Below, in pieces: positions 23,260-35,003 of a stretch of 64,000 bases of DNA. The notes under the pieces were generated by a model. It was given only the letters and a program-made list of their open reading frames with translations, was not told where the DNA came from and ran no database searches. Position 1 is the first letter of the stretch, and the number at the start of each line of letters is the position of its first letter. The translations under genes were made by a program, and so were the position numbers. Location of the stretch: positions 172,752-236,751 of the IMG/VR virus record IMGVR_UViG_3300021959_006017; one strand, 5' to 3'.

Positions 23260-24066
23260 ATGGACTTATATACAGTATTGGGCATCCCACGAACAGCATC
23301 TCCAGATGAAATAAAAAAGGCGTATAAGAAACAAGCCATGCGACACCATCCTGACAGAGGTGGTAATCCTGATGAGTTTCGTAAAGTGACTGAAGCATAT
23401 GACGTTCTAAGTAACAGTGATAAAAAGGCAGCATACGACAATCCACAACCAGGATTTAGTTTTAGATCACAGGACTTTGCACAAGGAAATCCTTTCGAAG
23501 GTACACCTTTTGAAAGTATATTTAGGCAAAGGCAAACACCTCGTAATAGAGATGTTCAAATGCCTGTTAATGTTACACTAAGAGATATTGTAACAGGGAA
23601 TCGAGTTGCTATAAACTACCAACTTAGTACAGGTAGAATCGAAACTGTAACTATTGATATTCCACCTGGTGCAAAACACGGTGATCAAATACGTTACGAA
23701 GGATTAGGCGATGAAGGCAATAAAAATTATCCTAGAGGAAACTTAATAGTTCAAATAAGAGTTCGAAAACATCGAGATTGGGCTAGAGATGGAGATAACT
23801 TAACTACAAAAAAATCTGTAAATTTGTTTGACTTTTTAACAGGAGGTGTTATAATAGTTAATACAATAGATGAAAAAAGTGTTAAACTTAACATACCACC
23901 AGGCACTAAACCAGGCACAACATTTAGTATATCAGGATATGGCATTCCTAATATTAACACAAGAAAACCTGGTAACTTATACGTCAAACTTGAAGCAGAA
24001 ATGCCAAAGATAAAAGATGCAAAGTTACTTGAAGAAATAGAAGATTTAAAAAGGAAAATAGGGTAA
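23260..24066 (+). CDS. dnaJ: DnaJ-class co-chaperone (CbpA-like, no Zn finger)
   Basis: J-domain with HPD; C-terminal substrate-binding domain. Confidence 0.9.
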   Translation: MDLYTVLGIPRTASPDEIKKAYKKQAMRHHPDRGGNPDEFRKVTEAYDVLSNSDKKAAYDNPQPGFSFRSQDFAQGNPFEGTPFESIFRQRQTPRNRDVQMPVNVTLRDIVTGNRVAINYQLSTGRIETVTIDIPPGAKHGDQIRYEGLGDEGNKNYPRGNLIVQIRVRKHRDWARDGDNLTTKKSVNLFDFLTGGVIIVNTIDEKSVKLNIPPGTKPGTTFSISGYGIPNINTRKPGNLYVKLEAEMPKIKDAKLLEEIEDLKRKIG

Positions 24067-24070
24067 AATA

Positions 24071-26320
24071 ATGGTAGAACCATCAAAGGATTTACAACTG
24101 GTTTTTGACAAAGCTATCAAAGATGCACAGAAGTTGCGTCACGAATATGTTACACTTGAACATATGATGTTTGCTATGATGTGTGAAGATAACTTTGTTA
24201 AGTTATTAGAAATGTATGGTGCAGATATTGATTATATCAAAGCCAACCTCGAACATCATTTAAAAACAAACAGCGATGATATTATTCTCCCCGAGGATAT
24301 TAAAAAATACAAGCCAAAGAAAACACAGGGTGTAGAACGTGCTTTGAATAGAGCATTTACACAGGTTCTTTTTGCAGGGCGTAGCCATATTGAGTTAAAA
24401 GATCTTTTGCTTAGTATTCTACATGAGAAGAAAAGTATTAGTGCTTACATCTTAGAAAAAGGTGGCGTTGGAAAAGATAAATTCAGTGACTTTGTAAACA
24501 ACGAAGTAGATGAAACACTACTGGAAGATCCTGAACTAACTAACGAAATGCGTAGAGCTATTAAGAGCTTTACAACTAACTTAAACGATCAAGTAAAACG
24601 TGGCAAGGTTGATCCTATTATTGGACGGGCTGACGAACTAGAAAGCCTTTGTTTGGCATTAGGTCGTCGAAGCAAAAATAATGTGCTAATGGTAGGTGAT
24701 CCGGGTGTTGGTAAAACTGCTATTGCAGAAGGACTTGCGTTTAATATCGAACAAGGTAATGTTCCAAGTTTCCTCAAAGAGTATAAAGTCTACAATCTAG
24801 ACATTGGTGCTATGCTTGCTGGTTCAAAATACCGCGGTGACTTTGAAGAACGTTTTAAACTTGTACTAAACGGACTTATCCGTGAAGGCAAGACTATTAT
24901 GTTTATCGACGAAGCACATATGATGAATGGTGCAGGTGCAGGCGGCAGTGGCAACTCAAACGATCTTGCTAATATGCTCAAGCCGGCACTAGCAAAAGGT
25001 GATCTAAAAGTTGTTGCTTCGACTACTTGGGAAGAGTTCCGCAAGTACTTTGAAAAAGATCGTGCGCTGATGCGTCGATTCCAGCGTGTAACTATTGGGG
25101 AACCTTCAAAAGAAACAACATCAGACATTCTAAGAGGTTTACGCAAGTACTATGAAGACTACCATGGAACAACTATTACTGATGACGCTATTGATGCGGC
25201 TATTAAACTAAGCGTTAAGTACCAAAGCGATAAGAAACTGCCAGACAAGGCTATTGACTTGATCGATGTTGCTTGTGCTAGATTTAAAGTTAACGATGAC
25301 GAAAACGAAGAAAAAACTGTAACTGAAGATAGTATCTTTTTTGAGCTTTCAAAAATGCTAAACTTGCCTACAGAACAAGTAGCACAGCGTGAATCAGAAA
25401 ACCTACAACATCTTGAAGACAATCTCAAGAAAGTTGTGTATGGACAAGACGATGCTATTGAAAGTATTGTTGATAAGATTCTTGTTAGCCAAGCAGGACT
25501 TAAACCAGATGATAAACCAGTAGGTGCATTTGTGTTTATGGGTCCAACAGGCACAGGTAAAACTGAAACTGCTAAACAGCTTGCAAATCAACTGGGTGTT
25601 AAACTTGTACGATTTGATATGAGTGAATACATGGAGAAACATAGTGTTGCAAAACTTATTGGCTCACCTCCAGGTTATGTAGGACACGAAGAAAACGCAG
25701 GTCAGTTGATTACTAAACTACAAGAGTCTCCTAACTGTGTACTCCTATTGGATGAGATCGAAAAAGCACACCCTGATGTTGCGCAGATTCTACTACAGAT
25801 TATGGACAACGGCTTGGTTACAGGCTCAAACGGTAAGGAAGCAGATGCACGTAACTGTACACTTATCCTTACAACTAACCTAGGTGCAGCACAAGCTGAA
25901 AAAGGTAGCATTGGTTTTGGTGATGACGAAGACTTTGGTTACGAAGATACAGAGTTTAAAAAGTATTTTGCTCCAGAGTTCCGCAATAGACTTGACGGTG
26001 TTATTACGTTTGCTAAACTTGGCAAAGAAGTAATGATGAAGATTGTTGGCAAGTTCCTTGTTGAACTTAAAGATATGGTCAAAGACAAAGGTATTGCTAT
26101 CGAAGTAACAGATGACGCACTTGACTATTTGGTAGACAAAGGTTTTGATCCTAAAAACGGTGCTCGTCCGCTACAACGTGTGATTGACAAAGACATTAAA
26201 CGTCCTCTTTCAAGACAGATGTTATTTGGTGATCTAAAAAATGGTGGCAAAGTAACAATCGATGTTAAAGATGACGAAGTAGTTCTTTCTGTAGAGGAAC
26301 TTGCAGTTGAAATATTATAA
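24071..26320 (+). CDS. clpA: ClpA AAA+ unfoldase
   Basis: Clp N domain; two AAA modules (GDPGVGKT, GPTGTGKT); IGF loop; no ClpB middle domain. Confidence 0.92.
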   Translation: MVEPSKDLQLVFDKAIKDAQKLRHEYVTLEHMMFAMMCEDNFVKLLEMYGADIDYIKANLEHHLKTNSDDIILPEDIKKYKPKKTQGVERALNRAFTQVLFAGRSHIELKDLLLSILHEKKSISAYILEKGGVGKDKFSDFVNNEVDETLLEDPELTNEMRRAIKSFTTNLNDQVKRGKVDPIIGRADELESLCLALGRRSKNNVLMVGDPGVGKTAIAEGLAFNIEQGNVPSFLKEYKVYNLDIGAMLAGSKYRGDFEERFKLVLNGLIREGKTIMFIDEAHMMNGAGAGGSGNSNDLANMLKPALAKGDLKVVASTTWEEFRKYFEKDRALMRRFQRVTIGEPSKETTSDILRGLRKYYEDYHGTTITDDAIDAAIKLSVKYQSDKKLPDKAIDLIDVACARFKVNDDENEEKTVTEDSIFFELSKMLNLPTEQVAQRESENLQHLEDNLKKVVYGQDDAIESIVDKILVSQAGLKPDDKPVGAFVFMGPTGTGKTETAKQLANQLGVKLVRFDMSEYMEKHSVAKLIGSPPGYVGHEENAGQLITKLQESPNCVLLLDEIEKAHPDVAQILLQIMDNGLVTGSNGKEADARNCTLILTTNLGAAQAEKGSIGFGDDEDFGYEDTEFKKYFAPEFRNRLDGVITFAKLGKEVMMKIVGKFLVELKDMVKDKGIAIEVTDDALDYLVDKGFDPKNGARPLQRVIDKDIKRPLSRQMLFGDLKNGGKVTIDVKDDEVVLSVEELAVEIL

Positions 26321-27387: not shown

Positions 27388-27957
27388 ATGGAACACTTTG
27401 TAAACATAGTAATGGAAAAGAATGATAACCTAACTGAAAGCCTAGATGAAAGTATCTTTCCAGGCAATATTGTTACAGAATCAGAACAAGGTGCTACTGT
27501 TATTCAAATACCTTTGCCTCGTCATCTAAGCGAACAAGAATCAGATGAATATGCTAACAGACTAGCAAACTATATGTTTGAAAATGGCTATGACGATTTT
27601 GACATTGAAATAAGTTCAGATGAAGAACTTGATGAAATAGAAGAAACATATGACAGTGATGAGTTTTTTGAAAACTATGGTGTTATGTGGTTCAACGAAG
27701 ATGATGAAATGGACGAGGCAGAATATCAAGGACGTAAAGTTAAGCTAGGCAAGCCAATGCGTGGCGATGTTAAAAAGTTTAAAGTATACGTTAAGGATCC
27801 AAAGACTAAGAACGTTAAAAAAGTAAACTTTGGCGATCCTGACATGAAGATTAAAAAATCAAATCCGGCACGTAGACGTTCATTCCGTGCTAGACACAAC
27901 TGTGATAACCCAGGTCCACGTACTAAGGCACGTTACTGGTCATGTAGGAAATGGTAA
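27388..27957 (+). CDS. Acidic leader plus basic C-terminal module (putative internal head protein)
   Basis: Acidic half ends MDE|AEYQGRKVKL...RRSFRARHNC...YWSCRKW. Confidence 0.65.
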   Translation: MEHFVNIVMEKNDNLTESLDESIFPGNIVTESEQGATVIQIPLPRHLSEQESDEYANRLANYMFENGYDDFDIEISSDEELDEIEETYDSDEFFENYGVMWFNEDDEMDEAEYQGRKVKLGKPMRGDVKKFKVYVKDPKTKNVKKVNFGDPDMKIKKSNPARRRSFRARHNCDNPGPRTKARYWSCRKW

Positions 27958-27958
27958 T

Positions 27959-28285
27959 ATGCGTATTGACGAGTTTGCACCACGAGTAGATAATAGCTTA
28001 CCCTATGATGTAGTAGACGATGTAAAATCATATATGATAAACGATAAGGATTTTTATCGTAGATCTCTATATCCAGCAATGTGTAAGTTACAAGATCAAA
28101 TGAAAAGTGGAAAAATGTCACCACTTACACTTGCTCCTGTAATAGATAAAGCATGTGCAGGATATTGTTCAAAGTTTAATATTCCAAAAGAACCTAAAGA
28201 CCTGTTGGATAAGTCAGAAAAAGTAGAACTTATGCAGCGTCTTATAGCAGATGAAAGAGAGAACTTAGAAAAAGGAGAGTTTTGA
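27959..28285 (+). CDS. Hypothetical protein (MRIDEF start)
   Basis: Start reassigned to ATG 27959 after the upstream stop. Confidence 0.6.
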   Translation: MRIDEFAPRVDNSLPYDVVDDVKSYMINDKDFYRRSLYPAMCKLQDQMKSGKMSPLTLAPVIDKACAGYCSKFNIPKEPKDLLDKSEKVELMQRLIADERENLEKGEF

Positions 28286-29271
28286 TGCTCCTTAGACAAC
28301 TCTTCGAAGAAAAAGCTCGTAAAGTAGTAGCAGTTATGCCAGGTGGGTTTCATCCATTTCATCCTGGACATAAAAGTTTATATGATTGGGCAGTCAAAAC
28401 ATTCGGACAAAGCAATGTTTACGTGGCAGCAACTAATGACACTGCTACAAGACCTTTCCCATTTGAAGTTAAGAAGAAACTAGCAGCAATGGCTGGTGTT
28501 CCTGAAAGCAACTTTATGCAAGTTAAATCCCCATTTAATAATAGAGAGTATGCCGGCCTTGTAGATGCAGACACTGCCTTAGTATTTGTACGCAGTCAAA
28601 AAGATAAATCAGAACAACCTTTGCCAGATCAAACTAAGAAGAATGGCGAGCCAGGTTACTTGCGTACTTACACAGGCAAAGACCTAAACACTTCAGATGA
28701 AATGGGCTATATGGCATACGGTCCTACTATTAACTTTGACTTTAGTGGTATGCAGATAAAGAGTGCAAGTGAACTTAGAGCCACTTGGCCTGAAATGTCA
28801 GATGATGATAAACTAAAGGCTGCACAACTAATGTACGGAAATGGTGCAGAAGCAGCAGTACAACTTCTAAACAAAGCATTAGGCGATACAGAAGCACCAG
28901 TAGGCGAAAGTGAAGTAGTACTAGACAAAACTAGTTTACGTGGATATATTCGTGATATGATTATAGATCATATTAACCAAGTCGACGATATTAAAAAACT
29001 GTCAGAAATATTATACAATCTAGTAGGCAAGCAAGTTAAGCACCGCGGACAAAGATTTACTGTTACTGATGAAGATATTACAGAAATACTAGGCTTTGCT
29101 ACTAAACGTCCTAAGCAAGCAACAAAAACAGTAAAGCGTAGACCGCCTGAAGAAGATAGTGTACAAGATAAGTTAGCCAAGCGTAGAAAACTAGCAAGTA
29201 GAGTAGGCGTAGATAAAGCATTTACAAGCAAAAGTGTTGATAAAGATTTAAACAAATATTTTGGAAAGTAA
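28285..29271 (+). CDS. HxGH nucleotidyltransferase domain plus C-terminal modules
   Basis: MLLRQLFEE leader; PGGFHPFHPGH and SASELR motifs. Confidence 0.75.
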   Translation: MLLRQLFEEKARKVVAVMPGGFHPFHPGHKSLYDWAVKTFGQSNVYVAATNDTATRPFPFEVKKKLAAMAGVPESNFMQVKSPFNNREYAGLVDADTALVFVRSQKDKSEQPLPDQTKKNGEPGYLRTYTGKDLNTSDEMGYMAYGPTINFDFSGMQIKSASELRATWPEMSDDDKLKAAQLMYGNGAEAAVQLLNKALGDTEAPVGESEVVLDKTSLRGYIRDMIIDHINQVDDIKKLSEILYNLVGKQVKHRGQRFTVTDEDITEILGFATKRPKQATKTVKRRPPEEDSVQDKLAKRRKLASRVGVDKAFTSKSVDKDLNKYFGK

Positions 29272-29272
29272 A

Positions 29273-29494
29273 ATGGATGAGCTAGAATATATTAAAAAAC
29301 TAGCTGGTGTAAATGAGTTTAAAGGTTACACAGAATATCAAATAGACGAAAACCCTAGCATTACTGCCACAGCAATCAAACAAAAAGAACGAGAAATGGG
29401 AGTTAAGCCAGGCGATCAAGAATGGTTTAAACTTTGGTTCTCTAAACCTTATATGACCGGTGTTCCAAATTTTAGAGGACGCAAGAAAAAATGA
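29273..29494 (+). CDS. Hypothetical protein (KKLAGV motif)
   Basis: MDELEYIKKLAGVNE...PGDQEWFKLWFS. Confidence 0.6.
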   Translation: MDELEYIKKLAGVNEFKGYTEYQIDENPSITATAIKQKEREMGVKPGDQEWFKLWFSKPYMTGVPNFRGRKKK

Positions 29495-30198
29495 AAATAA
29501 CTGACTTGCTGGAAGATGGACGTATTGTTAAAGGTGTTAATACTACAGTTGATGTAGGTGTTAATCAGATTCCTATCGAAGCAAATAAGTTTGGCAACAA
29601 AGTAGACAAAGACGGGCGGCCGCCCACCCTAAGCAAAAAAGTCAAAGGCTCTAGTACAAATGTACTGTTTAATCTAGGACTTGCAGAAGGCTACAAACTA
29701 CAACTAGAGCGTGACAAGCAAATGCTTGTTCTAAATATTAAGAATACAAAAACAGGTCAACGCACAGAAGTCCGTGGTAAACCGGGTTACGAAAGTGGTA
29801 ACTACGATCCAACTGACGATTTACATCAACTATTAGACACACTAGGTAAAAGTGTTGATATTTCACAACTGATGAATGGAGAACCTGTAGGTATACGTCC
29901 TGATCATCCCGATGGAAAGAAAGCAAAAGCAGCTACTCACAGAGCATTTAGTAAAATGGAACTTGCATACATGGAGGGTGGACATAGTCTAGATGATTTA
30001 GACAAGCCTACTCCTAGTGTTGCAGACATCGCTAAAATGCACGATGTTAGTGTAAGTCATATTGTACGTCAACTTGAAAAAGGCATTGAAGCAGAATACG
30101 AACACACATCAGACTTTGATCTTGCAAAAGAAATAGCACTTGATCATCTAGCAGAAGATCCTGACTACTACTTTAAACTTGGGATATTAGAGCTATGA
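29491..30198 (+). CDS. Modular putative internal head protein
   Basis: MKITDLLE leader; C-terminal module GIEAEYEHT...IALDHLAEDPDYY. Confidence 0.65.
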   Translation: MKITDLLEDGRIVKGVNTTVDVGVNQIPIEANKFGNKVDKDGRPPTLSKKVKGSSTNVLFNLGLAEGYKLQLERDKQMLVLNIKNTKTGQRTEVRGKPGYESGNYDPTDDLHQLLDTLGKSVDISQLMNGEPVGIRPDHPDGKKAKAATHRAFSKMELAYMEGGHSLDDLDKPTPSVADIAKMHDVSVSHIVRQLEKGIEAEYEHTSDFDLAKEIALDHLAEDPDYYFKLGILEL

Positions 30199-31463
30199 GA
30201 TGGTCAGAAGTTACAGAAAAGTGGTCACAGAAATACAAGCGTAGTATTAACTGTTCAAATCCAAAAGGATTTAGTCAAAAAGCTCATTGTGCTGGACGCA
30301 AGAAAACAAATGAAGCATTTGTTAAGCCACAGTTTGATGTAGAATGGGACGAAGCGGCTCGCTATCCAGAGTTTCAAAAGATTGGCAAAGAAGCGTGGAT
30401 TGAACTTGCTAAAACTGGTAAGGCTATAACTATTAAAAGTGCTAAGGGTATTGAGAACACAGATGCCGCAGATCCAGATAGTTTTAAAAGTTTAGATCCA
30501 GCAAAGCAGAAAAGAGCGTTAGCACAACTAGAAAAAGGTTCGGTTGAAATGCCTATTGTTGCTGTTTACAGTGACGGATACAAAGAACTTGTAGGCGGTA
30601 ATACAAGACTTACTGCTATGATGGCACAAAACGGCAAAGCAACTGTGTGGGCATTTAAAGTGCCAGACGAAGTTGCCGAACTAGCTGAAAACTTTGCTGA
30701 TGGTAAAAGTAAAGCAAAGCGTAGACAAATGGATGAAAAAACATACCATGAGTCATTAGAAGAAGCACTAGGTGAAATTGCTCCTAATACAGAAATATAT
30801 GTTGATATGGATGGCGTACTTGCTGACTTTTTTGGCGAATGGTCAAAGTCGCAAGGTGTTGATAACTGGAAAGACATCAAAGATCCTGCAAAAGCAATTG
30901 GTGATATTAAAAGCATAGAAGACTTTTGGTTAAACTTACCAATACTACCTAAAGCAAAAGAATTACTAGGACTAATAAAACAAGTTAAAGGCAAGTATAA
31001 GATATGTACAAGTCCATTGGCAGACGATCCACGTAGTGAACCACACAAACGTGAGTGGGTAAAGAAGAATTTATCGTTTTTCCCACCAGAAGAAGTCATT
31101 GTTACACATAACAAGCCGCAGTTTGCAAAACAAAAAGACGGTACTCCTAACATACTAATAGATGACTATGGTGTTAATATAAACGCTTGGGAAGAAGCAG
31201 GCGGCATAGGATTTAAATACAAAGACTATAAGTTTAATAGAACAGCAAAGGCAATAAAAAATAGAATAGAAGATCCTGTAGAAGAAAACTTTGCTGACGG
31301 TAAGAAAAAAGGAAAGAGCCGCCCAGGGCGTGTAAAACGTGCTGGTGCAAGTTGTAATGGCAGTGTAACTGCACTCCGCAAACGAGCAAAAAATAGCTCC
31401 GGAGAAAAAAGGAGGATGTATCATTGGTGCGCAAACATGAAATCGGGAAGGAAGAAAAAATAG
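30195..31463 (+). CDS. Modular polyprotein: basic peptide, ParB/Srx-like domain, 5'(3')-deoxyribonucleotidase-like HAD domain, basic peptide
   Basis: MRWSEVTE leader; PIV...LVGGNTRL; YVDMDGVLADF...ILIDDYGVN; two ENFADGK linkers. Confidence 0.75.
   Translation: MRWSEVTEKWSQKYKRSINCSNPKGFSQKAHCAGRKKTNEAFVKPQFDVEWDEAARYPEFQKIGKEAWIELAKTGKAITIKSAKGIENTDAADPDSFKSLDPAKQKRALAQLEKGSVEMPIVAVYSDGYKELVGGNTRLTAMMAQNGKATVWAFKVPDEVAELAENFADGKSKAKRRQMDEKTYHESLEEALGEIAPNTEIYVDMDGVLADFFGEWSKSQGVDNWKDIKDPAKAIGDIKSIEDFWLNLPILPKAKELLGLIKQVKGKYKICTSPLADDPRSEPHKREWVKKNLSFFPPEEVIVTHNKPQFAKQKDGTPNILIDDYGVNINAWEEAGGIGFKYKDYKFNRTAKAIKNRIEDPVEENFADGKKKGKSRPGRVKRAGASCNGSVTALRKRAKNSSGEKRRMYHWCANMKSGRKKK
30687..31303 (+). 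repeat. 20-bp near-perfect direct repeat flanking the HAD domain
   Basis: GAAAACTTTGCTGATGGTAA (30687) and GAAAACTTTGCTGACGGTAA (31284). Confidence 0.85.
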
Positions 31464-31660
31464 TAGAACTATATCCAGACGGATATAGCAGAAAATGGAG
31501 AGAATATGAAAGTGTTCCTGTAGAACACTATATCGCCAAACACAAAGAACACGAAGCACGAAGAGCAAGTTTTAATGAACGTGCAGAGTACTGGAAAACA
31601 TACAAAAAATATTTAAAAAATACTAATCCCGAAACTGGTTTTAACATGAATGACTTCTAA
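31424..31660 (+). CDS. Hypothetical protein
   Basis: Fills the gap between genes; start uncertain. Confidence 0.45.
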   Translation: MVRKHEIGKEEKIVELYPDGYSRKWREYESVPVEHYIAKHKEHEARRASFNERAEYWKTYKKYLKNTNPETGFNMNDF

Positions 31661-31672
31661 GGTAAATACAAT

Positions 31673-32020
31673 ATGAAGATGAAAGAACTATTAACAGAAG
31701 AAGAGTTTAAGGATGTACATAGTAGTACACTTCCTCATGCAAGTTATTATCCGGAAATGCCTGCAAGTAGTCCTTACTACGCATACCGTTTCGGAATGGG
31801 CATGGCGGATCATACTACTTTTCATCCCAACGGACCATCAAAAAACTCAGCAGTTATAGTTCAGTATTCAAAAGGGGAAGAAGAAATAGTCGCCGCAACA
31901 GAAAAGAAACTAGGAAAGTTTGGTAAAAAGACCTTAGCAGATGGTGGAAGTAACGAACCAGAAGGCACAAACAAAACCAGTCCTGTTGCAAAGAAAAAGA
32001 AAAACAAATACGGTGTATAA
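31673..32020 (+). CDS. Putative internal head protein
   Basis: MKMKELLTEE leader; YYAYRFG; basic KKKKNKYGV end. Confidence 0.6.
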   Translation: MKMKELLTEEEFKDVHSSTLPHASYYPEMPASSPYYAYRFGMGMADHTTFHPNGPSKNSAVIVQYSKGEEEIVAATEKKLGKFGKKTLADGGSNEPEGTNKTSPVAKKKKNKYGV

Positions 32021-32022
32021 CT

Positions 32023-32364
32023 ATGAGATTTCGTGAACTAATAAAAGAAGAAGGATATGACACACAACGTGATGCAGATGCTGTAAGTGGTAAGCCTCGT
32101 AAAACATCTGTAGGTGGTGGCAAAAAGCCTAAAGGTTATAGCAAAGACAAAGCAGAGAAAGCCGCTATGGATAATGTTAAAAAAGCCTTAGCAAAAGAAT
32201 CAGCAACAGGTATGGGTGCAGCAAGTATTGCTACAGCAGTAGGAAATGTAGGCCCAACTATCAGTAGAAACATGTATAACGACGATGGCACTATGAAAAA
32301 CGGCGTTGACTTTGATAATCTAATGGGTGGCAAAAAGAAATCAAAGAAGCGTAAAAAGGCATAA
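32023..32364 (+). CDS. Putative internal head protein
   Basis: MRFRELIKEE leader; LAKE|SATG junction. Confidence 0.6.
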   Translation: MRFRELIKEEGYDTQRDADAVSGKPRKTSVGGGKKPKGYSKDKAEKAAMDNVKKALAKESATGMGAASIATAVGNVGPTISRNMYNDDGTMKNGVDFDNLMGGKKKSKKRKKA

Positions 32365-32367
32365 ATA
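32360..32367 (+). promoter_or_regulatory. Late-type promoter CATAAATA
   Basis: Octamer overlapping the stop codon. Confidence 0.55.
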
Positions 32368-32395
32368 CTATATAATGCGCATTACGGAGTAATCA

Positions 32396-33145
32396 ATGAG
32401 AGAAAAAGATTTAAAAGAAGGTTTAGGCGATCTAGCTCATAAAGCAGAAAAAGACCATGAAGTACAAATGGCTCGTGCTGACCTATACAAACTAGCAAAG
32501 TATGCTATCAAGTTACACGATATGCTCAAGCAAGTACCTGAAGAAGCAGGACTAGAAGGTTGGGTACAATCAAAAATCACAAAAGCAGCTGATTACATTG
32601 GCAGTGTTTATCACCATCTTGATTACGAAGAAGCAACAGGCGAACTAGGTGAAAGCGCAGTAAAAGAAGCAAGTTGCGGATGCGATGAAAATAGCTGTTC
32701 ACACTGCAAAGGTAAGCACACACTAGACGAAGTAGGTCAAAAGTGTGAGTGCTGTGGCAATATGATTAAAGAAGTAACTGCTGAAGGCAAGTTCAAATCA
32801 GATGCACAACGTAAAGCTATTCATGCAGCAAAAGCAAGTGGCAAGCGTAGCAAAAAGAAACTCCGTGACCACAGTGACTTATCAGATAGACTAGCAGCAA
32901 AACTCGAATCAAAAAAAAAGGTAGCTGAACGCAGTCTTTCCAAAGGCGAAGAAAAAGACAAAGAAAAGTACGTCAAAGGCATGAAAAAAGCCAAAGGCGA
33001 CTTTAAAGATCGCTACGGCAAAGATGCAGAAGCAGTTATGTATGCAACTGCTACCAAAATGGCTAAAGAGGCAACTAAGATTACACCAAAACAAATCAAA
33101 GCAGATAAAATAAAATCTCAAAAGATTACAGCAAAGACGGAGTAA
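32396..33145 (+). CDS. Modular putative internal head protein with Cys-rich (Zn?) module
   Basis: MREKDLKE leader; LEGWVQSKITKAADY; CGC..CSHC..CECC. Confidence 0.65.
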   Translation: MREKDLKEGLGDLAHKAEKDHEVQMARADLYKLAKYAIKLHDMLKQVPEEAGLEGWVQSKITKAADYIGSVYHHLDYEEATGELGESAVKEASCGCDENSCSHCKGKHTLDEVGQKCECCGNMIKEVTAEGKFKSDAQRKAIHAAKASGKRSKKKLRDHSDLSDRLAAKLESKKKVAERSLSKGEEKDKEKYVKGMKKAKGDFKDRYGKDAEAVMYATATKMAKEATKITPKQIKADKIKSQKITAKTE

Positions 33146-33148
33146 CAC

Positions 33149-33457
33149 ATGTCAGAGTCATTTAAAGCACTTATGCAAAAGATTGCAGAAATAGAAGAAC
33201 GCAAAGAAGACGACAAAGACGGAGATTTAAAAGGCTTTGACAGTCGTACAATGCGAGCATTAACTCGTATTAAGGCACAGTATCCAAATGCTCCAAACGA
33301 CCTTGCAGCACTTCTACGCCATGTAACTAACGTTGATAAAGACAGTGATACTAATGACGATGAACATATTAGCAGAATCAAAAAACTAGAAGATAAAGTA
33401 GAAGAACTAGAAAAGAAACTTACACTATTGTTAAGGAAAAAAAGTAATGGACTTTAA
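33149..33457 (+). CDS. Hypothetical coiled-coil protein
   Basis: 102-aa ORF within the cluster. Confidence 0.55.
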   Translation: MSESFKALMQKIAEIEERKEDDKDGDLKGFDSRTMRALTRIKAQYPNAPNDLAALLRHVTNVDKDSDTNDDEHISRIKKLEDKVEELEKKLTLLLRKKSNGL

Positions 33458-35003
33458 CGCACTACAACATAAACTTTTTGCACTAGATCCAAGCGATCTT
33501 GCAGCTGACAAACAAGCACTTATAGCACAAGCACAAGGAGCAGTTGTAGATACGCCAAAAGTAGATTATGTAACAGAAAGTACAGAAGTTCCAAAAGGCA
33601 GTATGCCTATTGATTTAGATCTAGCAGGACTTACAGCACTTGCAGGTGTAAGACTAGATGAAAAACAAAAGATGGGTAGTGCAGGACAAGCAAAAGGCAA
33701 AGACCCTATGCCAAAAGCAGAACCTGGACGTACAAAGCATCCATTAAAAGATAAACTTGTAGGCGAAGCAGAAACCTCAACAGGTTTTGAACCTCAAGGA
33801 TTCAAAGCAGCATTTAAAAACTATAATAAAGTTGATCCGTGGTTAGGTACTAGTACTGACGATGATGGTAAAAAGAAAGACGAACCAAAAACTCCACCTA
33901 AAAAAGGTGAAAAGCCAGCACCAGGACCAACACCAGGACCAACTCCAAAACCTACTCCAAGTCCGTGGCCTACAAGTAAAGAAGGTTATACACTAAAAGT
34001 AGGAGACTTAGTCACTTACGCAAACAAAAAAGGACAAACACGAGAAGATGTTCCAGTTGTTAAACTTTTAAAAGGAACAAAAGACGGTAAAGGTCGTCCA
34101 CAGATACAGCTACAACTACGTGGTGCAACTTATGCTATTAGTAGAGAACAAATACAAAAAGTAAATGGTAAAACATTTACACTAGATGATGCTGAAGCAG
34201 GTACAGGTACACTAAAAGACCAACTGTTACAAGCTCTAGAAGCGTACAAGCAAAAGCCACAGATTAAACCACGTGATCCAAATGCACAAGCAATGAATGA
34301 CTTGCGCAGAAGTGGTGCAATGGGTGCGCACAAAGACAAAAAGCGTGATGCTAAGATGGGCAAAGTTAAGCACAAAGGCAAGATAGACGAAAGCAAAATG
34401 TCGTTTAACGACATGATGAAAAACAGAGAGTTTTATTACACATATAAACAATATGTAAGTGGTAACGCTAATGTAGATCAAGTGGCTGAGTTAGTAAGAG
34501 GCCGTGTTGATAAAGAAAAGTTTGCTGACGAAATACATAGAAAAGGTGTTGAGTACGGTGGCGCAAAAGGTAAACGAATCAAAGATCTTGCAGATATTAT
34601 AAGAAAAGATTCTAACGTGCTTGATTTACCAGGAAAAGCATTTAGTAAGATTAAAAAAATGGTAGGTATGGGCGAAGGTATGGACGAATCTTATACTAAA
34701 GTAGATGGTATGGAAGCTGAAGAACTACGCAAACAGTATGCCAAAGACTGGGAAATACGTAAAGGCAAGTATCTTTATAAAAAAGTAGCCTTTGACGACT
34801 ACAACACTGTACTACGTTTCTTAATGGTTATCGAAAAACCACAGATTGAACTAGATCATTTTGCAAATATTAAGTTCTTTTACAATGAAGCAGAGCTTGT
34901 TGTATACACACACGACACAAAAGGTCTTACAACACTTGACTTTAAACTTGCTGTGCAAATAGATCGTGCGTTAGATCGAATGGGAGCGAAAGAGATAGGA
35001 TGA
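33447..35003 (+). CDS. Modular polyprotein ending in a pterin-4a-carbinolamine dehydratase-like domain
   Basis: LAGVRLDE, LVGE, IDE, MDE junctions; Pro/Thr linker; C-terminal W...LDHFANI...YTHDTKGLTTLDFKLA..ID. Confidence 0.7.
   Translation: MDFNALQHKLFALDPSDLAADKQALIAQAQGAVVDTPKVDYVTESTEVPKGSMPIDLDLAGLTALAGVRLDEKQKMGSAGQAKGKDPMPKAEPGRTKHPLKDKLVGEAETSTGFEPQGFKAAFKNYNKVDPWLGTSTDDDGKKKDEPKTPPKKGEKPAPGPTPGPTPKPTPSPWPTSKEGYTLKVGDLVTYANKKGQTREDVPVVKLLKGTKDGKGRPQIQLQLRGATYAISREQIQKVNGKTFTLDDAEAGTGTLKDQLLQALEAYKQKPQIKPRDPNAQAMNDLRRSGAMGAHKDKKRDAKMGKVKHKGKIDESKMSFNDMMKNREFYYTYKQYVSGNANVDQVAELVRGRVDKEKFADEIHRKGVEYGGAKGKRIKDLADIIRKDSNVLDLPGKAFSKIKKMVGMGEGMDESYTKVDGMEAEELRKQYAKDWEIRKGKYLYKKVAFDDYNTVLRFLMVIEKPQIELDHFANIKFFYNEAELVVYTHDTKGLTTLDFKLAVQIDRALDRMGAKEIG

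What the first reader, a model, noticed from the sequence alone, without database searches (positions are those of the whole stretch)
30687..31303. Nucleotidase module bracketed by a duplicated cleavage-site linker (ENFADGK twice)
Seen: a 20-nt repeat with one mismatch, encoding E|NFADGK, flanks the HAD 5'-nucleotidase-like domain. The first copy is followed by a short decayed tail (KSKAKRRQ), the second by the full basic peptide. Inference: the enzyme was inserted in frame by duplication or recombination at a linker, a mechanism by which cargo could be added to or removed from the polyproteins.
Basis: partly seen in the sequence, partly recalled or inferred. Interest (0 to 1): 0.7.

Follow-up and report, generated by a model that had tools for sequence, protein, structure and literature searches.

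The report
Shuffled phage cargo protein with junction motif
The two ENFADGK copies are real, but they are two instances of a junction motif shared by over a thousand modular proteins of uncultured marine and estuarine giant phages; this gene was built by recombination at that junction, and the motif looks like a cutting site for a phage head protease.

Summary
A 20-nt repeat with one synonymous mismatch (30687-30706 and 31284-31303) encodes ENFADGK twice in one 422-aa ORF (30195-31463, +) and brackets an NT5C deoxyribonucleotidase domain.

Homologues that lack the nucleotidase and carry a single ENFADGK exist (P0121-P0126, and the syntenic locus L076). The same genomic slot holds many different module orders in related phages.

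The repeat is not a duplication made by an insertion. ENFADGK is a junction found across the family, and each copy came in with its own upstream module.

The "decayed tail" KSKAKRRQ is not a remnant of the basic tail. Its DNA is 100% identical to the start of a different basic segment that precedes the nucleotidase in the closest relative (L083). The crossover lies at GGTAA, the Gly-Lys codons.

ENFADGK plus the basic tail is nearly invariant at the C-terminus of at least 1,100 otherwise unrelated protein clusters. The third residue before the cut point is V/I/L/M in 83% of contexts, and the residue just before it is always Glu. This matches the T4-type prohead-protease rule. Most tagged proteins also start with a leader resembling the T4 capsid targeting sequence.

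Cleavage and packaging are inferred, not shown. The head gene module is missing from this 67%-complete genome.

The parts
30195..31463 (+). ORF of 422 aa (P0001), a modular protein: leader, A, B, J1, K stub, C, J2, T
   Evidence: The identical protein is found on 8 contigs from at least 4 metagenomes.
30195..30218 (+). N-terminal leader MRWSEVTE, resembling the T4 capsid targeting sequence, with V-T-E just before module A
   Evidence: The T4 sequence MKTYQEFIAE is given in PMC8442874.
30219..30314 (+). Module A: basic two-cysteine peptide (WSQKYKRSINCSNPKGFSQKAHCAGRKK), shared with cyanomyoviruses
   Evidence: Contig depth peaks here.
30315..30686 (+). Module B: domain with a ParB/sulfiredoxin-like fold and an invariant GGNTR motif
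   Evidence: pLDDT 85-97. AFDB cluster match E 5.9e-7; PDB matches to PadC, Noc, ParB and Srx. Invariant columns.
30687..30707 (+). Junction J1: ENFADGK, preceded by L-A-E. First copy of the repeat.
   Evidence: Lies in a linker with pLDDT below 50 (residues 166-193).
30702..30732 (+). K stub (GKSKAKRRQM), the truncated head of a different basic segment. It contains the recombination joint at GGTAA and lies next to a 27-nt in-frame indel flanked by AAATGG.
   Evidence: 100% DNA identity to L083 1486-1516. Protein context in P0009.
30732..31280 (+). Module C: NT5C / HAD 5'(3')-deoxyribonucleotidase domain. Motifs DMDGV, CTSP, NKPQ and IDDYG are intact.
   Evidence: Pfam PF06941. PHROG 2643. Foldseek match to 1q92 and related structures at E 4e-5.
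31284..31304 (+). Junction J2: ENFADGK, preceded by V-E-E. Second copy of the repeat.
   Evidence: Lies in a linker with pLDDT below 50 (residues 345-375).
31305..31460 (+). Module T: near-invariant basic C-terminal tail (KKGKSRPGRVKR, ASC, MYHWCANMK and so on), predicted as a disordered basic run followed by a helical hairpin
   Evidence: Found in 1,593 representative clusters.
29491..30198 (+). Upstream gene (module D, DUF5661). In relatives it is fused in frame to C-T, or followed by ENFADGK where this gene has its stop codon.

Best explanation
The ORF is a mosaic, beads-on-a-string cargo protein of an uncultured estuarine/marine myovirus of about 350 kb. The two ENFADGK copies are two instances of a junction motif found across the family: V/I/L/M, any residue, Glu, then NFADGK. 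This motif separates modules in well over a thousand distinct proteins.

Shown: the gene joins the A-B-junction part of an A-B-tail type gene to the K-NT5C-junction-tail part of a P0009-type gene. The crossover is at GGTAA, the Gly-Lys codons that end the first ENFADGK. A 27-nt in-frame deletion lies just downstream. Each ENFADGK was therefore inherited with its own upstream module and was not created by the insertion.

Inferred: the junction is a processing site for a protease that cuts after Glu, of the T4 gp21 / S77 prohead-protease type. The N-terminal leader MRWSEVTE would act like the T4 capsid targeting sequence. The precursor would then enter the prohead and be cut into a basic A peptide, a ParB/Srx-like domain, a deoxyribonucleotidase and a basic tail peptide, which would be packaged and ejected with the DNA. 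Because the junction peptide is conserved, its DNA also gives short homology. Together with the long homology of the tail, this lets cargo modules be swapped in frame.
For: Mosaic origin. A-B-tail genes (L084, L085) align to window 30229-30718 and again from 31283. L083 aligns at 90.6% to 30727-31461, plus a 31-nt block of 100% identity at 30702-30732. Module C is 96-98% identical in protein to relatives whose flanking genes are only 64-84% identical.

Family-wide junction. There are 22 distinct internal contexts followed by different modules. All seven codons vary synonymously among 57 terminal and 10 internal copies.

The rule. The third residue before the cut point is V/I/L/M in 184 of 223 unique contexts, against a 20% background. 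The second, fourth and fifth residues are not enriched. The residue just before the cut point is always Glu. The same rule holds before module A in 37 of 39 contexts.

Linkers. Both junctions lie in segments with pLDDT below 50 between confident domains.

Leader. 86 of 141 tail-tagged representatives have an N-terminal leader of the form M, K/R, two residues, E/D, hydrophobic, two residues, E. Only 41 of 328 genes in this genome do (Fisher p = 6e-26). Five consecutive genes in the window carry it (p = 1.5e-5).

T4 precedent. The capsid targeting sequence is MKTYQEFIAE, its residues 8 and 10 govern processing, and cleavage follows Glu (PMC8442874, PMC9026906, PMC5694885).

Cyanophage S-SM2, which has an S77 protease, has a gene between gp16 and gp17 that starts MKTLKQFLKE and ends with module A.

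Gene ends and junctions are interchangeable. The upstream gene stops where P0095 has ...FIE followed by NFADGK.

The cargo set resembles known ejected proteins: SLT, GH19, LysM, lysozyme, ParB_N, GNAT, Pol-beta nucleotidyltransferase, ART-PolyVal and sigma-70 region 4.

PA5oct, the nearest cultured relative by terminase, encodes an S77 protease.
Against: No prohead protease, major capsid protein or T4-type portal was found in this genome or in five related partial genomes. The records are only 30-67% complete, and tblastn with the PA5oct head-module proteins (portal, protease, major capsid protein and neighbours) found nothing in this genome. The protease is therefore unassessed, not shown.

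There is no proteomic or expression evidence. The tail and module B are absent from all cultured phages.

The gene cluster lies next to replication and chaperone genes, not head genes.

The contexts counted are not phylogenetically independent, and the homologue sets were seeded with this protein.

The strict conservation of NFADGK after the cut point is more than T4-type proteases are known to need, so the motif may have another or an additional role.

The site after module A in this protein (T-N-E) does not fit the rule.
Confidence: 0.55

Rival explanations
1. The HAD domain was inserted into a single linker, duplicating ENFADGK in the manner of a target-site or tandem duplication. The first copy keeps a short decayed remnant of the basic tail.
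For: The two 20-nt copies differ at one synonymous site. A-B-tail forms with one copy exist.
Against: The stub after copy 1 is 100% identical in DNA to a different module of L083, not to the tail. C-junction-tail and B-junction-tail are both common adjacencies on their own in other genomes, so one crossover between two parents explains both copies. Copy 1 differs from the A-B-tail relatives only at GAT/GAC and at the Lys codon, which matches L083.
Confidence: 0.08
2. ENFADGK is only a conserved flexible linker or the start of the tail tag, and it is never cut. The multidomain protein works intact. The basic tail tethers the enzymes to nucleic acid or to another common partner in the infected cell.
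For: The junction and tail are near-invariant as one unit at the C-terminus of more than 1,100 clusters. The conservation after the cut point exceeds what a Glu-specific protease needs. No protease was identified. The cluster sits among early or replication-type genes.
Against: The junction also occurs without the tail, before unrelated modules and directly after N-terminal leaders. The aliphatic preference three residues before the cut point, with variable neighbours, is a protease-type signature, not a linker property. Gene boundaries and junctions are interchangeable.
Confidence: 0.27
3. The leader and the junction-tail are conserved mainly as DNA-level recombination sites for cassette exchange, analogous to the mobile regulatory cassettes of T4-type hyperplastic regions. 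The peptides themselves would have no function.
For: Extensive in-frame shuffling occurs at these borders. Assembly graphs branch at A and at the junction-tail, where contig depth is about tenfold higher.
Against: All third codon positions of ENFADGK vary while the peptide stays invariant. Tail DNA identity is 73-90% while the protein is 78-97% identical. The aliphatic-residue rule lies outside the repeated DNA and is a protein-level constraint.
Confidence: 0.07
4. ENFADGK mimics part of an ssrA-type degradation tag (compare ...DENYALAA). It would route these proteins to the phage's own ClpA/ClpP or to host adaptors for timed destruction.
For: The phage encodes a ClpA-like unfoldase (window 24071-26320) and a canonical ClpP (G000 146055-146630, E 1.6e-61). 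From my own knowledge, ENFA resembles ENYA in the ssrA tag.
Against: From my own knowledge, the resemblance misses the residues known to bind SspB or ClpX. The motif is internal, not C-terminal. The genome has no tmRNA. Nothing links the Clp genes to the cluster beyond proximity.
Confidence: 0.03

Closest known systems
T4 internal proteins (IPI-III, Alt) with a capsid targeting sequence, processed by the gp21 (Peptidase S77) prohead protease
   Same: Both have a roughly 8-10 residue N-terminal leader of the same pattern (M, K/R, ..., E, F/V, ..., E), with an aliphatic-x-Glu triplet at its end. Both have highly basic products. Passenger enzymes can ride along. Cleavage follows Glu (PMC8442874, PMC9026906, PMC5694885).
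   Different: Here the sites are also internal and are followed by an invariant NFADGK. One precursor holds several modules. There is a near-invariant C-terminal basic tail with no T4 counterpart. The cargo set is vastly more diverse. Neither packaging nor cleavage has been shown, and the protease has not been found.
Polyvalent proteins of phages and conjugative elements (Iyer et al. 2017, PMC5512222)
   Same: Disparate enzymatic domains sit in one polypeptide. The domain repertoire overlaps: ParB/Srx-like, GNAT, Pol-beta nucleotidyltransferase, ART-PolyVal, lysozyme and peptidoglycan-binding domains. In both cases the protein is proposed to be injected with the DNA and processed into units.
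   Different: There is no embedded MPTase or other peptidase domain. The proteins are much smaller, with 2-5 modules. They have a defined junction motif, a common leader and a common tail, none of which is described for polyvalent proteins.
Phage 5'(3')-deoxyribonucleotidases (NT5C, PHROG 2643)
   Same: Module C is a member: it has the Pfam and PHROG matches, the HAD motifs and a dNT-1/dNT-2-like predicted fold.
   Different: Typical phage NT5C genes are stand-alone (Melnitz, phiM5 and others). Here the domain is one bead in a shuffled precursor with a leader, junctions and a tail.

Membership tests
NT5C / HAD deoxyribonucleotidase (PF06941) | Profile match above the curated cut-off | tested here: met
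   31.5 bits against 24.8, residues 201-342. PHROG 2643 at E 2.4e-21.
NT5C / HAD deoxyribonucleotidase (PF06941) | HAD catalytic motifs (DxDx[TV], S/T, K, DD) and the dNT fold | tested here: met
   DMDGV, CTSP, NKPQ and IDDYG are present. Foldseek matches 1q92, 2jao and 2i7d at E 4e-5 to 6e-4. Enzyme activity was not tested.
ParB/sulfiredoxin superfamily (module B) | ParB N-domain fold with a conserved Arg in the GxxR pocket | tested here: inconclusive
   AFDB cluster 'ParB/Sulfiredoxin' at E 5.9e-7, TM 0.66 by hit. PDB matches to PadC, Noc, ParB and Srx are only E 0.01-0.3. GGNTR is invariant. There is no Pfam match. In P0235 a true ParB_N domain occupies the same slot.
T4-type capsid-targeted internal proteins | N-terminal leader of about 10 residues ending in aliphatic-x-Glu | tested here: met
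   The leader is MRWSEVTE. The family consensus is M, K/R, two residues, E/D, hydrophobic, two residues, E in 86 of 141 representatives. This is a pattern match only.
T4-type capsid-targeted internal proteins | A cognate S77 (gp21-type) prohead protease in the same genome | tested here: inconclusive
   PF03420 was not found in G000-G005. Positive controls worked in P-TIM68, S-SM2, Melnitz and PA5oct. G000 lacks the whole head module and is 67% complete.
T4-type capsid-targeted internal proteins | Presence in virions and cleavage after Glu | not testable with these tools
   There is no cultured representative and no proteome.
Polyvalent proteins (PMC5512222) | Two or more biochemically disparate domains in one polypeptide of a phage | tested here: met
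   A ParB/Srx-like domain and NT5C, plus two basic peptides.
Polyvalent proteins (PMC5512222) | An embedded processing peptidase (MPTase or assemblin-like). This is common in the class (about 36% of members have MPTase) but not universal. | tested here: not met
   No peptidase domain was found in this protein or among 143 tail-tagged representatives.

The most novel reading that the evidence does not exclude
Uncultured marine and estuarine myoviruses of about 350 kb carry a previously undescribed, very large system of capsid-targeted polyprotein cargo. More than 1,000 different enzyme or peptide bodies share a leader resembling the T4 capsid targeting sequence, a fixed protease junction (V/I/L-x-E followed by NFADGK) and a near-invariant basic tail. 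New cargo is plugged in or removed in frame by recombination at the junction. The window's gene would be one freshly assembled example.
Probability: 0.35. Interest if true: 0.8.

Novelty: new variant of a known kind. Interest (0 to 1): 0.62.

Why it matters
If the junction is a processing site and the leader targets the capsid, these phages deliver a large, rapidly reshuffled set of enzymes into the host along with their DNA. The set includes nucleotidases, ParB-like domains, acetyltransferases, superoxide dismutase, cell-wall hydrolases and sigma-factor fragments.

That would extend the T4 internal-protein idea and the polyvalent-protein idea to an abundant, uncultured ocean lineage. It would also give a simple sequence grammar (leader, junction, tail) for finding injected effectors in metagenomes.

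Even without cleavage, this is a clear natural example of in-frame domain shuffling at a defined linker, with both parental forms and the crossover point visible in DNA.

Tried and rejected
1. "Decayed tail" after copy 1. Rejected: the DNA is identical to another module of L083. That segment is reminiscent of DUF3008, but Pfam does not confirm this, so I do not claim it.

2. Other ENFADGK, tail or A copies elsewhere in the genome. None found, so this phage has no paralogous polyprotein set using this motif.

3. Prohead protease, major capsid protein and portal. Pfam S77, Gp23, Portal_T4 and S78, and the PA5oct proteins, all gave nothing in G000-G005. This is uninformative because the head module is missing. 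The 343-kb metagenome contig holding the same gene could not be searched.

4. ClpP. A canonical ClpP is present. A second ClpP-like "head maturation protease" occurs in relative G001, but in a non-structural context. No link to the junction was found.

5. Excision variants. Only assembler contigs were available. No precise joint between copy 1 and copy 2 was seen, and the two-copy form assembled without differences in runs from 2018 and 2023. Rare variants cannot be excluded.

6. Cultured phages carrying the tail or module B. None found.

7. Literature. Searches for ENFADGK and for DUF5661 returned no papers.

8. ssrA-tag mimicry. Considered and rated unlikely. The genome has no tmRNA.

Full report
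**1. The observation**

The window is the last 64 kb of a single-contig IMG/VR virus record of 236,751 bp with 39% G+C, estimated 67% complete. The finding lies in one ORF, 30195-31463 (+), of 422 aa.

The two 20-mers GAAAACTTTGCTGATGGTAA (30687-30706) and GAAAACTTTGCTGACGGTAA (31284-31303) are present, in frame, and both encode ENFADGK. A degenerate back-translation of ENFADGK finds exactly these two sites, against 0.00 expected by chance. The rest of the genome has no further copy.

Between the copies lies an NT5C deoxyribonucleotidase domain:
- Pfam PF06941 scores above its cut-off, and PHROG 2643 matches.
- The HAD motifs are intact.
- The predicted fold matches human and mouse dNT-1/dNT-2.

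**2. Anatomy of the protein**

The order of parts is:
- Leader MRWSEVTE, residues 1-8.
- A, residues 9-40: a basic peptide with two cysteines.
- B, residues 41-164.
- J1, ENFADGK, residues 165-171.
- A short basic stub, GKSKAKRRQM, residues 170-179.
- C, NT5C, residues 180-362.
- J2, ENFADGK, residues 364-370.
- T, residues 371-422: a very basic tail with conserved ASC...MYHWCANMK.

AlphaFold2 with a curated alignment gives confident domains for B (pLDDT 85-94), C and the helical part of T. Segments 166-193 and 345-375, which hold the two junctions, have pLDDT below 50. A second model of an A-B-T homologue shows the same pattern.

That second model identifies B as a ParB/sulfiredoxin-like fold. 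The AFDB cluster match has E 5.9e-7. All top PDB matches are ParB, Noc, PadC or Srx, though weak. The motif GGNTR is invariant.

**3. Relatives: the modules are shuffled**

More than 5,000 metagenomic proteins match the ORF. Mapping the four modules onto 240 of them shows almost every order: C-A-B-T, B-C-A, B-C-T, C-B-T, A-C-T, C-T alone (249-260 aa), B-T and A-B-T. Other domains also appear, including Pterin_4a, Cu/Zn superoxide dismutase, GNAT and sigma-70 region 4.

P0121-P0126 (217-239 aa, 76-87% identical) are A-B-T proteins with one ENFADGK and no nucleotidase.

The locus is syntenic in dozens of viral contigs, in the order g27388, g27959, g28282, g29261, g29491, variable gene, g32396, g33447.

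**4. How this particular gene was built**

DNA comparisons give the breakpoints.
- A-B-T genes (L084, L085) align with window 30229-30718, and again from 31283 onward.
- The gene for P0009 (L083; architecture D-K-C-J-T, with C 98% identical in protein) aligns at 90.6% with 30727-31461.
- L083 also aligns separately at 100% over 31 nt with 30702-30732.

The multiple alignment shows that the window follows the A-B-T type up to GCTGAT. From GGTAA onward it follows L083 exactly.

In L083 this block begins a different basic segment, GKSKAKRRQMAVAAKLSKM, which precedes the nucleotidase. The window lacks 27 nt of that segment, an in-frame indel flanked by AAATGG repeats.

The left crossover sits at the Gly-Lys codons, where the start of the tail (GKKKGK) and the other segment (GKSKAK) resemble each other. 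One crossover between an A-B-J-T gene and a ...K-C-J-T gene explains the whole structure. Each ENFADGK came with its own upstream module.

Module C is 96-98% identical to relatives whose flanking genes are only 64-84% identical. This indicates recent lateral exchange of the module.

The two-copy form is stable. The identical protein occurs on 8 contigs from at least 4 metagenomes. Contigs from runs of 2018 and 2023 cover both junctions without a single difference.

No precise excision joint was seen. Only assembler contigs were available, and these drop rare variants. Contig depth rises about tenfold over A and over J-T, because many other phages in the samples share these modules.

**5. What ENFADGK is**

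It is a junction used across the family, not a local duplication.
- In the 240 homologues it occurs internally in 22 distinct contexts. It is followed by quite different modules (B, C, T or unknown ones). It also occurs directly after N-terminal leaders, as in MRASEFVTE followed by NFADGK.
- All seven codons vary at synonymous positions among 57 terminal and 10 internal copies from the viral loci, while the peptide does not change. Selection therefore acts on the peptide.
- phmmer with J-T (65 aa) against 1.84 billion representatives of 50%-identity clusters finds 1,593 clusters at E ≤ 1e-3 and 1,148 at E ≤ 1e-10. The tail is 78-97% identical, almost always at the extreme C-terminus, on proteins of 83-1,405 aa that are otherwise unrelated.
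- Pfam domains among 143 of these include NT5C, DUF6934, Pterin_4a, ParB_N, GNAT, Sod_Cu, sigma-70 region 4, cytidylyltransferase, poly(A) polymerase, SLT, LysM, GH19, dCMP deaminase and Pol-beta nucleotidyltransferase.
- The Atlas search adds NUDIX and ART-PolyVal.

**6. The cleavage-site reading**

The residues upstream of NFADGK follow a sharp rule. The residue just before the cut point is Glu in every case. The third residue before it is V/I/L/M in 184 of 223 unique contexts (83%), against 20% background. The second, fourth and fifth residues are not enriched. Other Glu residues in the same proteins show only the background value.

The same rule holds before module A: 37 of 39 contexts read aliphatic, any residue, E, one residue, then WSxKYK.

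This is the recognition pattern of T4 gp21 and its relatives in giant phages, which all cut after Glu at a short motif (PMC5694885, PMC9026906).

In addition, 86 of 141 tail-tagged representatives begin with a leader of the form M, K/R, two residues, E/D, hydrophobic, two residues, E. Only 41 of 328 genes in this genome do (p = 6e-26). Five consecutive genes in the window (29491-33145) carry the strict form (p = 1.5e-5).

The T4 capsid targeting sequence is MKTYQEFIAE. Its residues 8 and 10 control processing (PMC8442874, PMC9026906).

In cyanophage S-SM2, a true T4-like phage with an S77 protease, a gene between gp16 and gp17 begins MKTLKQFLKE and ends with module A. In P-TIM68, module A lies in a gene directly downstream of the major head gene.

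Gene ends and junctions are interchangeable. The upstream DUF5661 gene stops at ...FKLGILEL, where a homologue continues ...NLKFIE followed by NFADGK. In several relatives the same module is fused in frame to C-T.

Together these points make proteolytic processing of a capsid-targeted precursor the best-supported mechanism.

**7. What is missing**

Neither an S77 protease nor a major capsid protein nor a T4-type portal is detectable in this record or in five related partial genomes.

The searches work on controls, including PA5oct, the nearest cultured relative by terminase at 53% identity. Local tblastn with the PA5oct head-module proteins (portal, protease, major capsid protein and neighbours) finds nothing in this genome. 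The head module therefore appears to lie in the missing third of the genome, and the negative result is uninformative.

The tail and module B do not occur in any cultured phage, so no virion proteome can be consulted. The invariance of NFADGK after the cut point exceeds what such proteases are known to require and is unexplained. The motif may also bind something.

**8. Comparison with known systems**

The closest mechanisms are two:
- The T4 internal-protein system, with its capsid targeting sequence and gp21 processing.
- The polyvalent proteins of Iyer et al. (PMC5512222).

The second shares the domain repertoire and the idea of injected, processed multidomain effectors. It usually relies on embedded peptidases, which are absent here.

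Literature searches for the motif and for DUF5661 returned nothing. I rate this as a new variant of a known kind.

**9. Verdict**

- The recombination-at-a-linker idea is supported, and the crossover is now mapped.
- The duplication and "decayed tail" details are wrong.
- The cleavage-site idea is plausible and strengthened, but unproven.

My confidence in the mosaic origin is about 0.85. My confidence in processing at the junction is about 0.45, and in capsid packaging about 0.35.

Noticed in passing
window 27959-33145: A run of small genes whose products start with leaders resembling the T4 capsid targeting sequence (MRIDEF, MKITDLLED, MRWSEVTE, MKMKELLTE, MRFRELIKE, MREKDLKE). Many also end in very basic tails (RGRKKK, KKKKNKYGV, KKSKKRKKA). 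A second such group lies at about 96.8-101.5 kb in the genome.
   Followed up: partly
window 23260-26320; G000:C1:146055-146630: The phage encodes a DnaJ-like protein (268 aa) and a ClpA-like double-AAA+ unfoldase (749 aa, with an IGF-type loop) directly upstream of the cluster. A canonical ClpP lies elsewhere in the genome (E 1.6e-61). Together these could form a phage-borne ClpAP system.
   Followed up: partly
window 27388-27957: The C-terminus carries another conserved basic two-cysteine peptide (...RRSFRARHNCDNPGPRTKARYWSCRKW). It is of the same general style as modules A and T, and a similar ending is seen in cyanophage S-SCSM2R gene 176.
   Followed up: no
window 30726-30732 versus L083 1510-1543: A 27-nt in-frame indel (AVAAKLSKM) flanked by direct AAATGG repeats, just downstream of the recombination joint. 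It looks like a microhomology-mediated deletion.
   Followed up: yes
window 33447-35003 and 28285-29271: Neighbouring cluster genes carry a Pterin_4a domain at the end of a 518-aa protein with a Pro-rich low-complexity middle, and a cytidylyltransferase-like domain. Both domain types also occur among tail-tagged proteins elsewhere.
   Followed up: partly
L085 3148-5001: In one relative, the gene just upstream of the A-B-T gene is a 617-aa protein combining NT5C with LysM and a phage lysozyme domain.
   Followed up: no
P0018 (724 aa) compared with window 30195-31463: A second protein has the same A-B-ENFADGK-NT5C-ENFADGK-T order, but its NT5C module is only 39% identical and its linker differs. 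This suggests the ParB-like plus nucleotidase pairing was assembled more than once.
   Followed up: no
G000:C1:74151-74401 and 148599-150119: There are 11 tRNA genes in two clusters and no tmRNA.
   Followed up: yes
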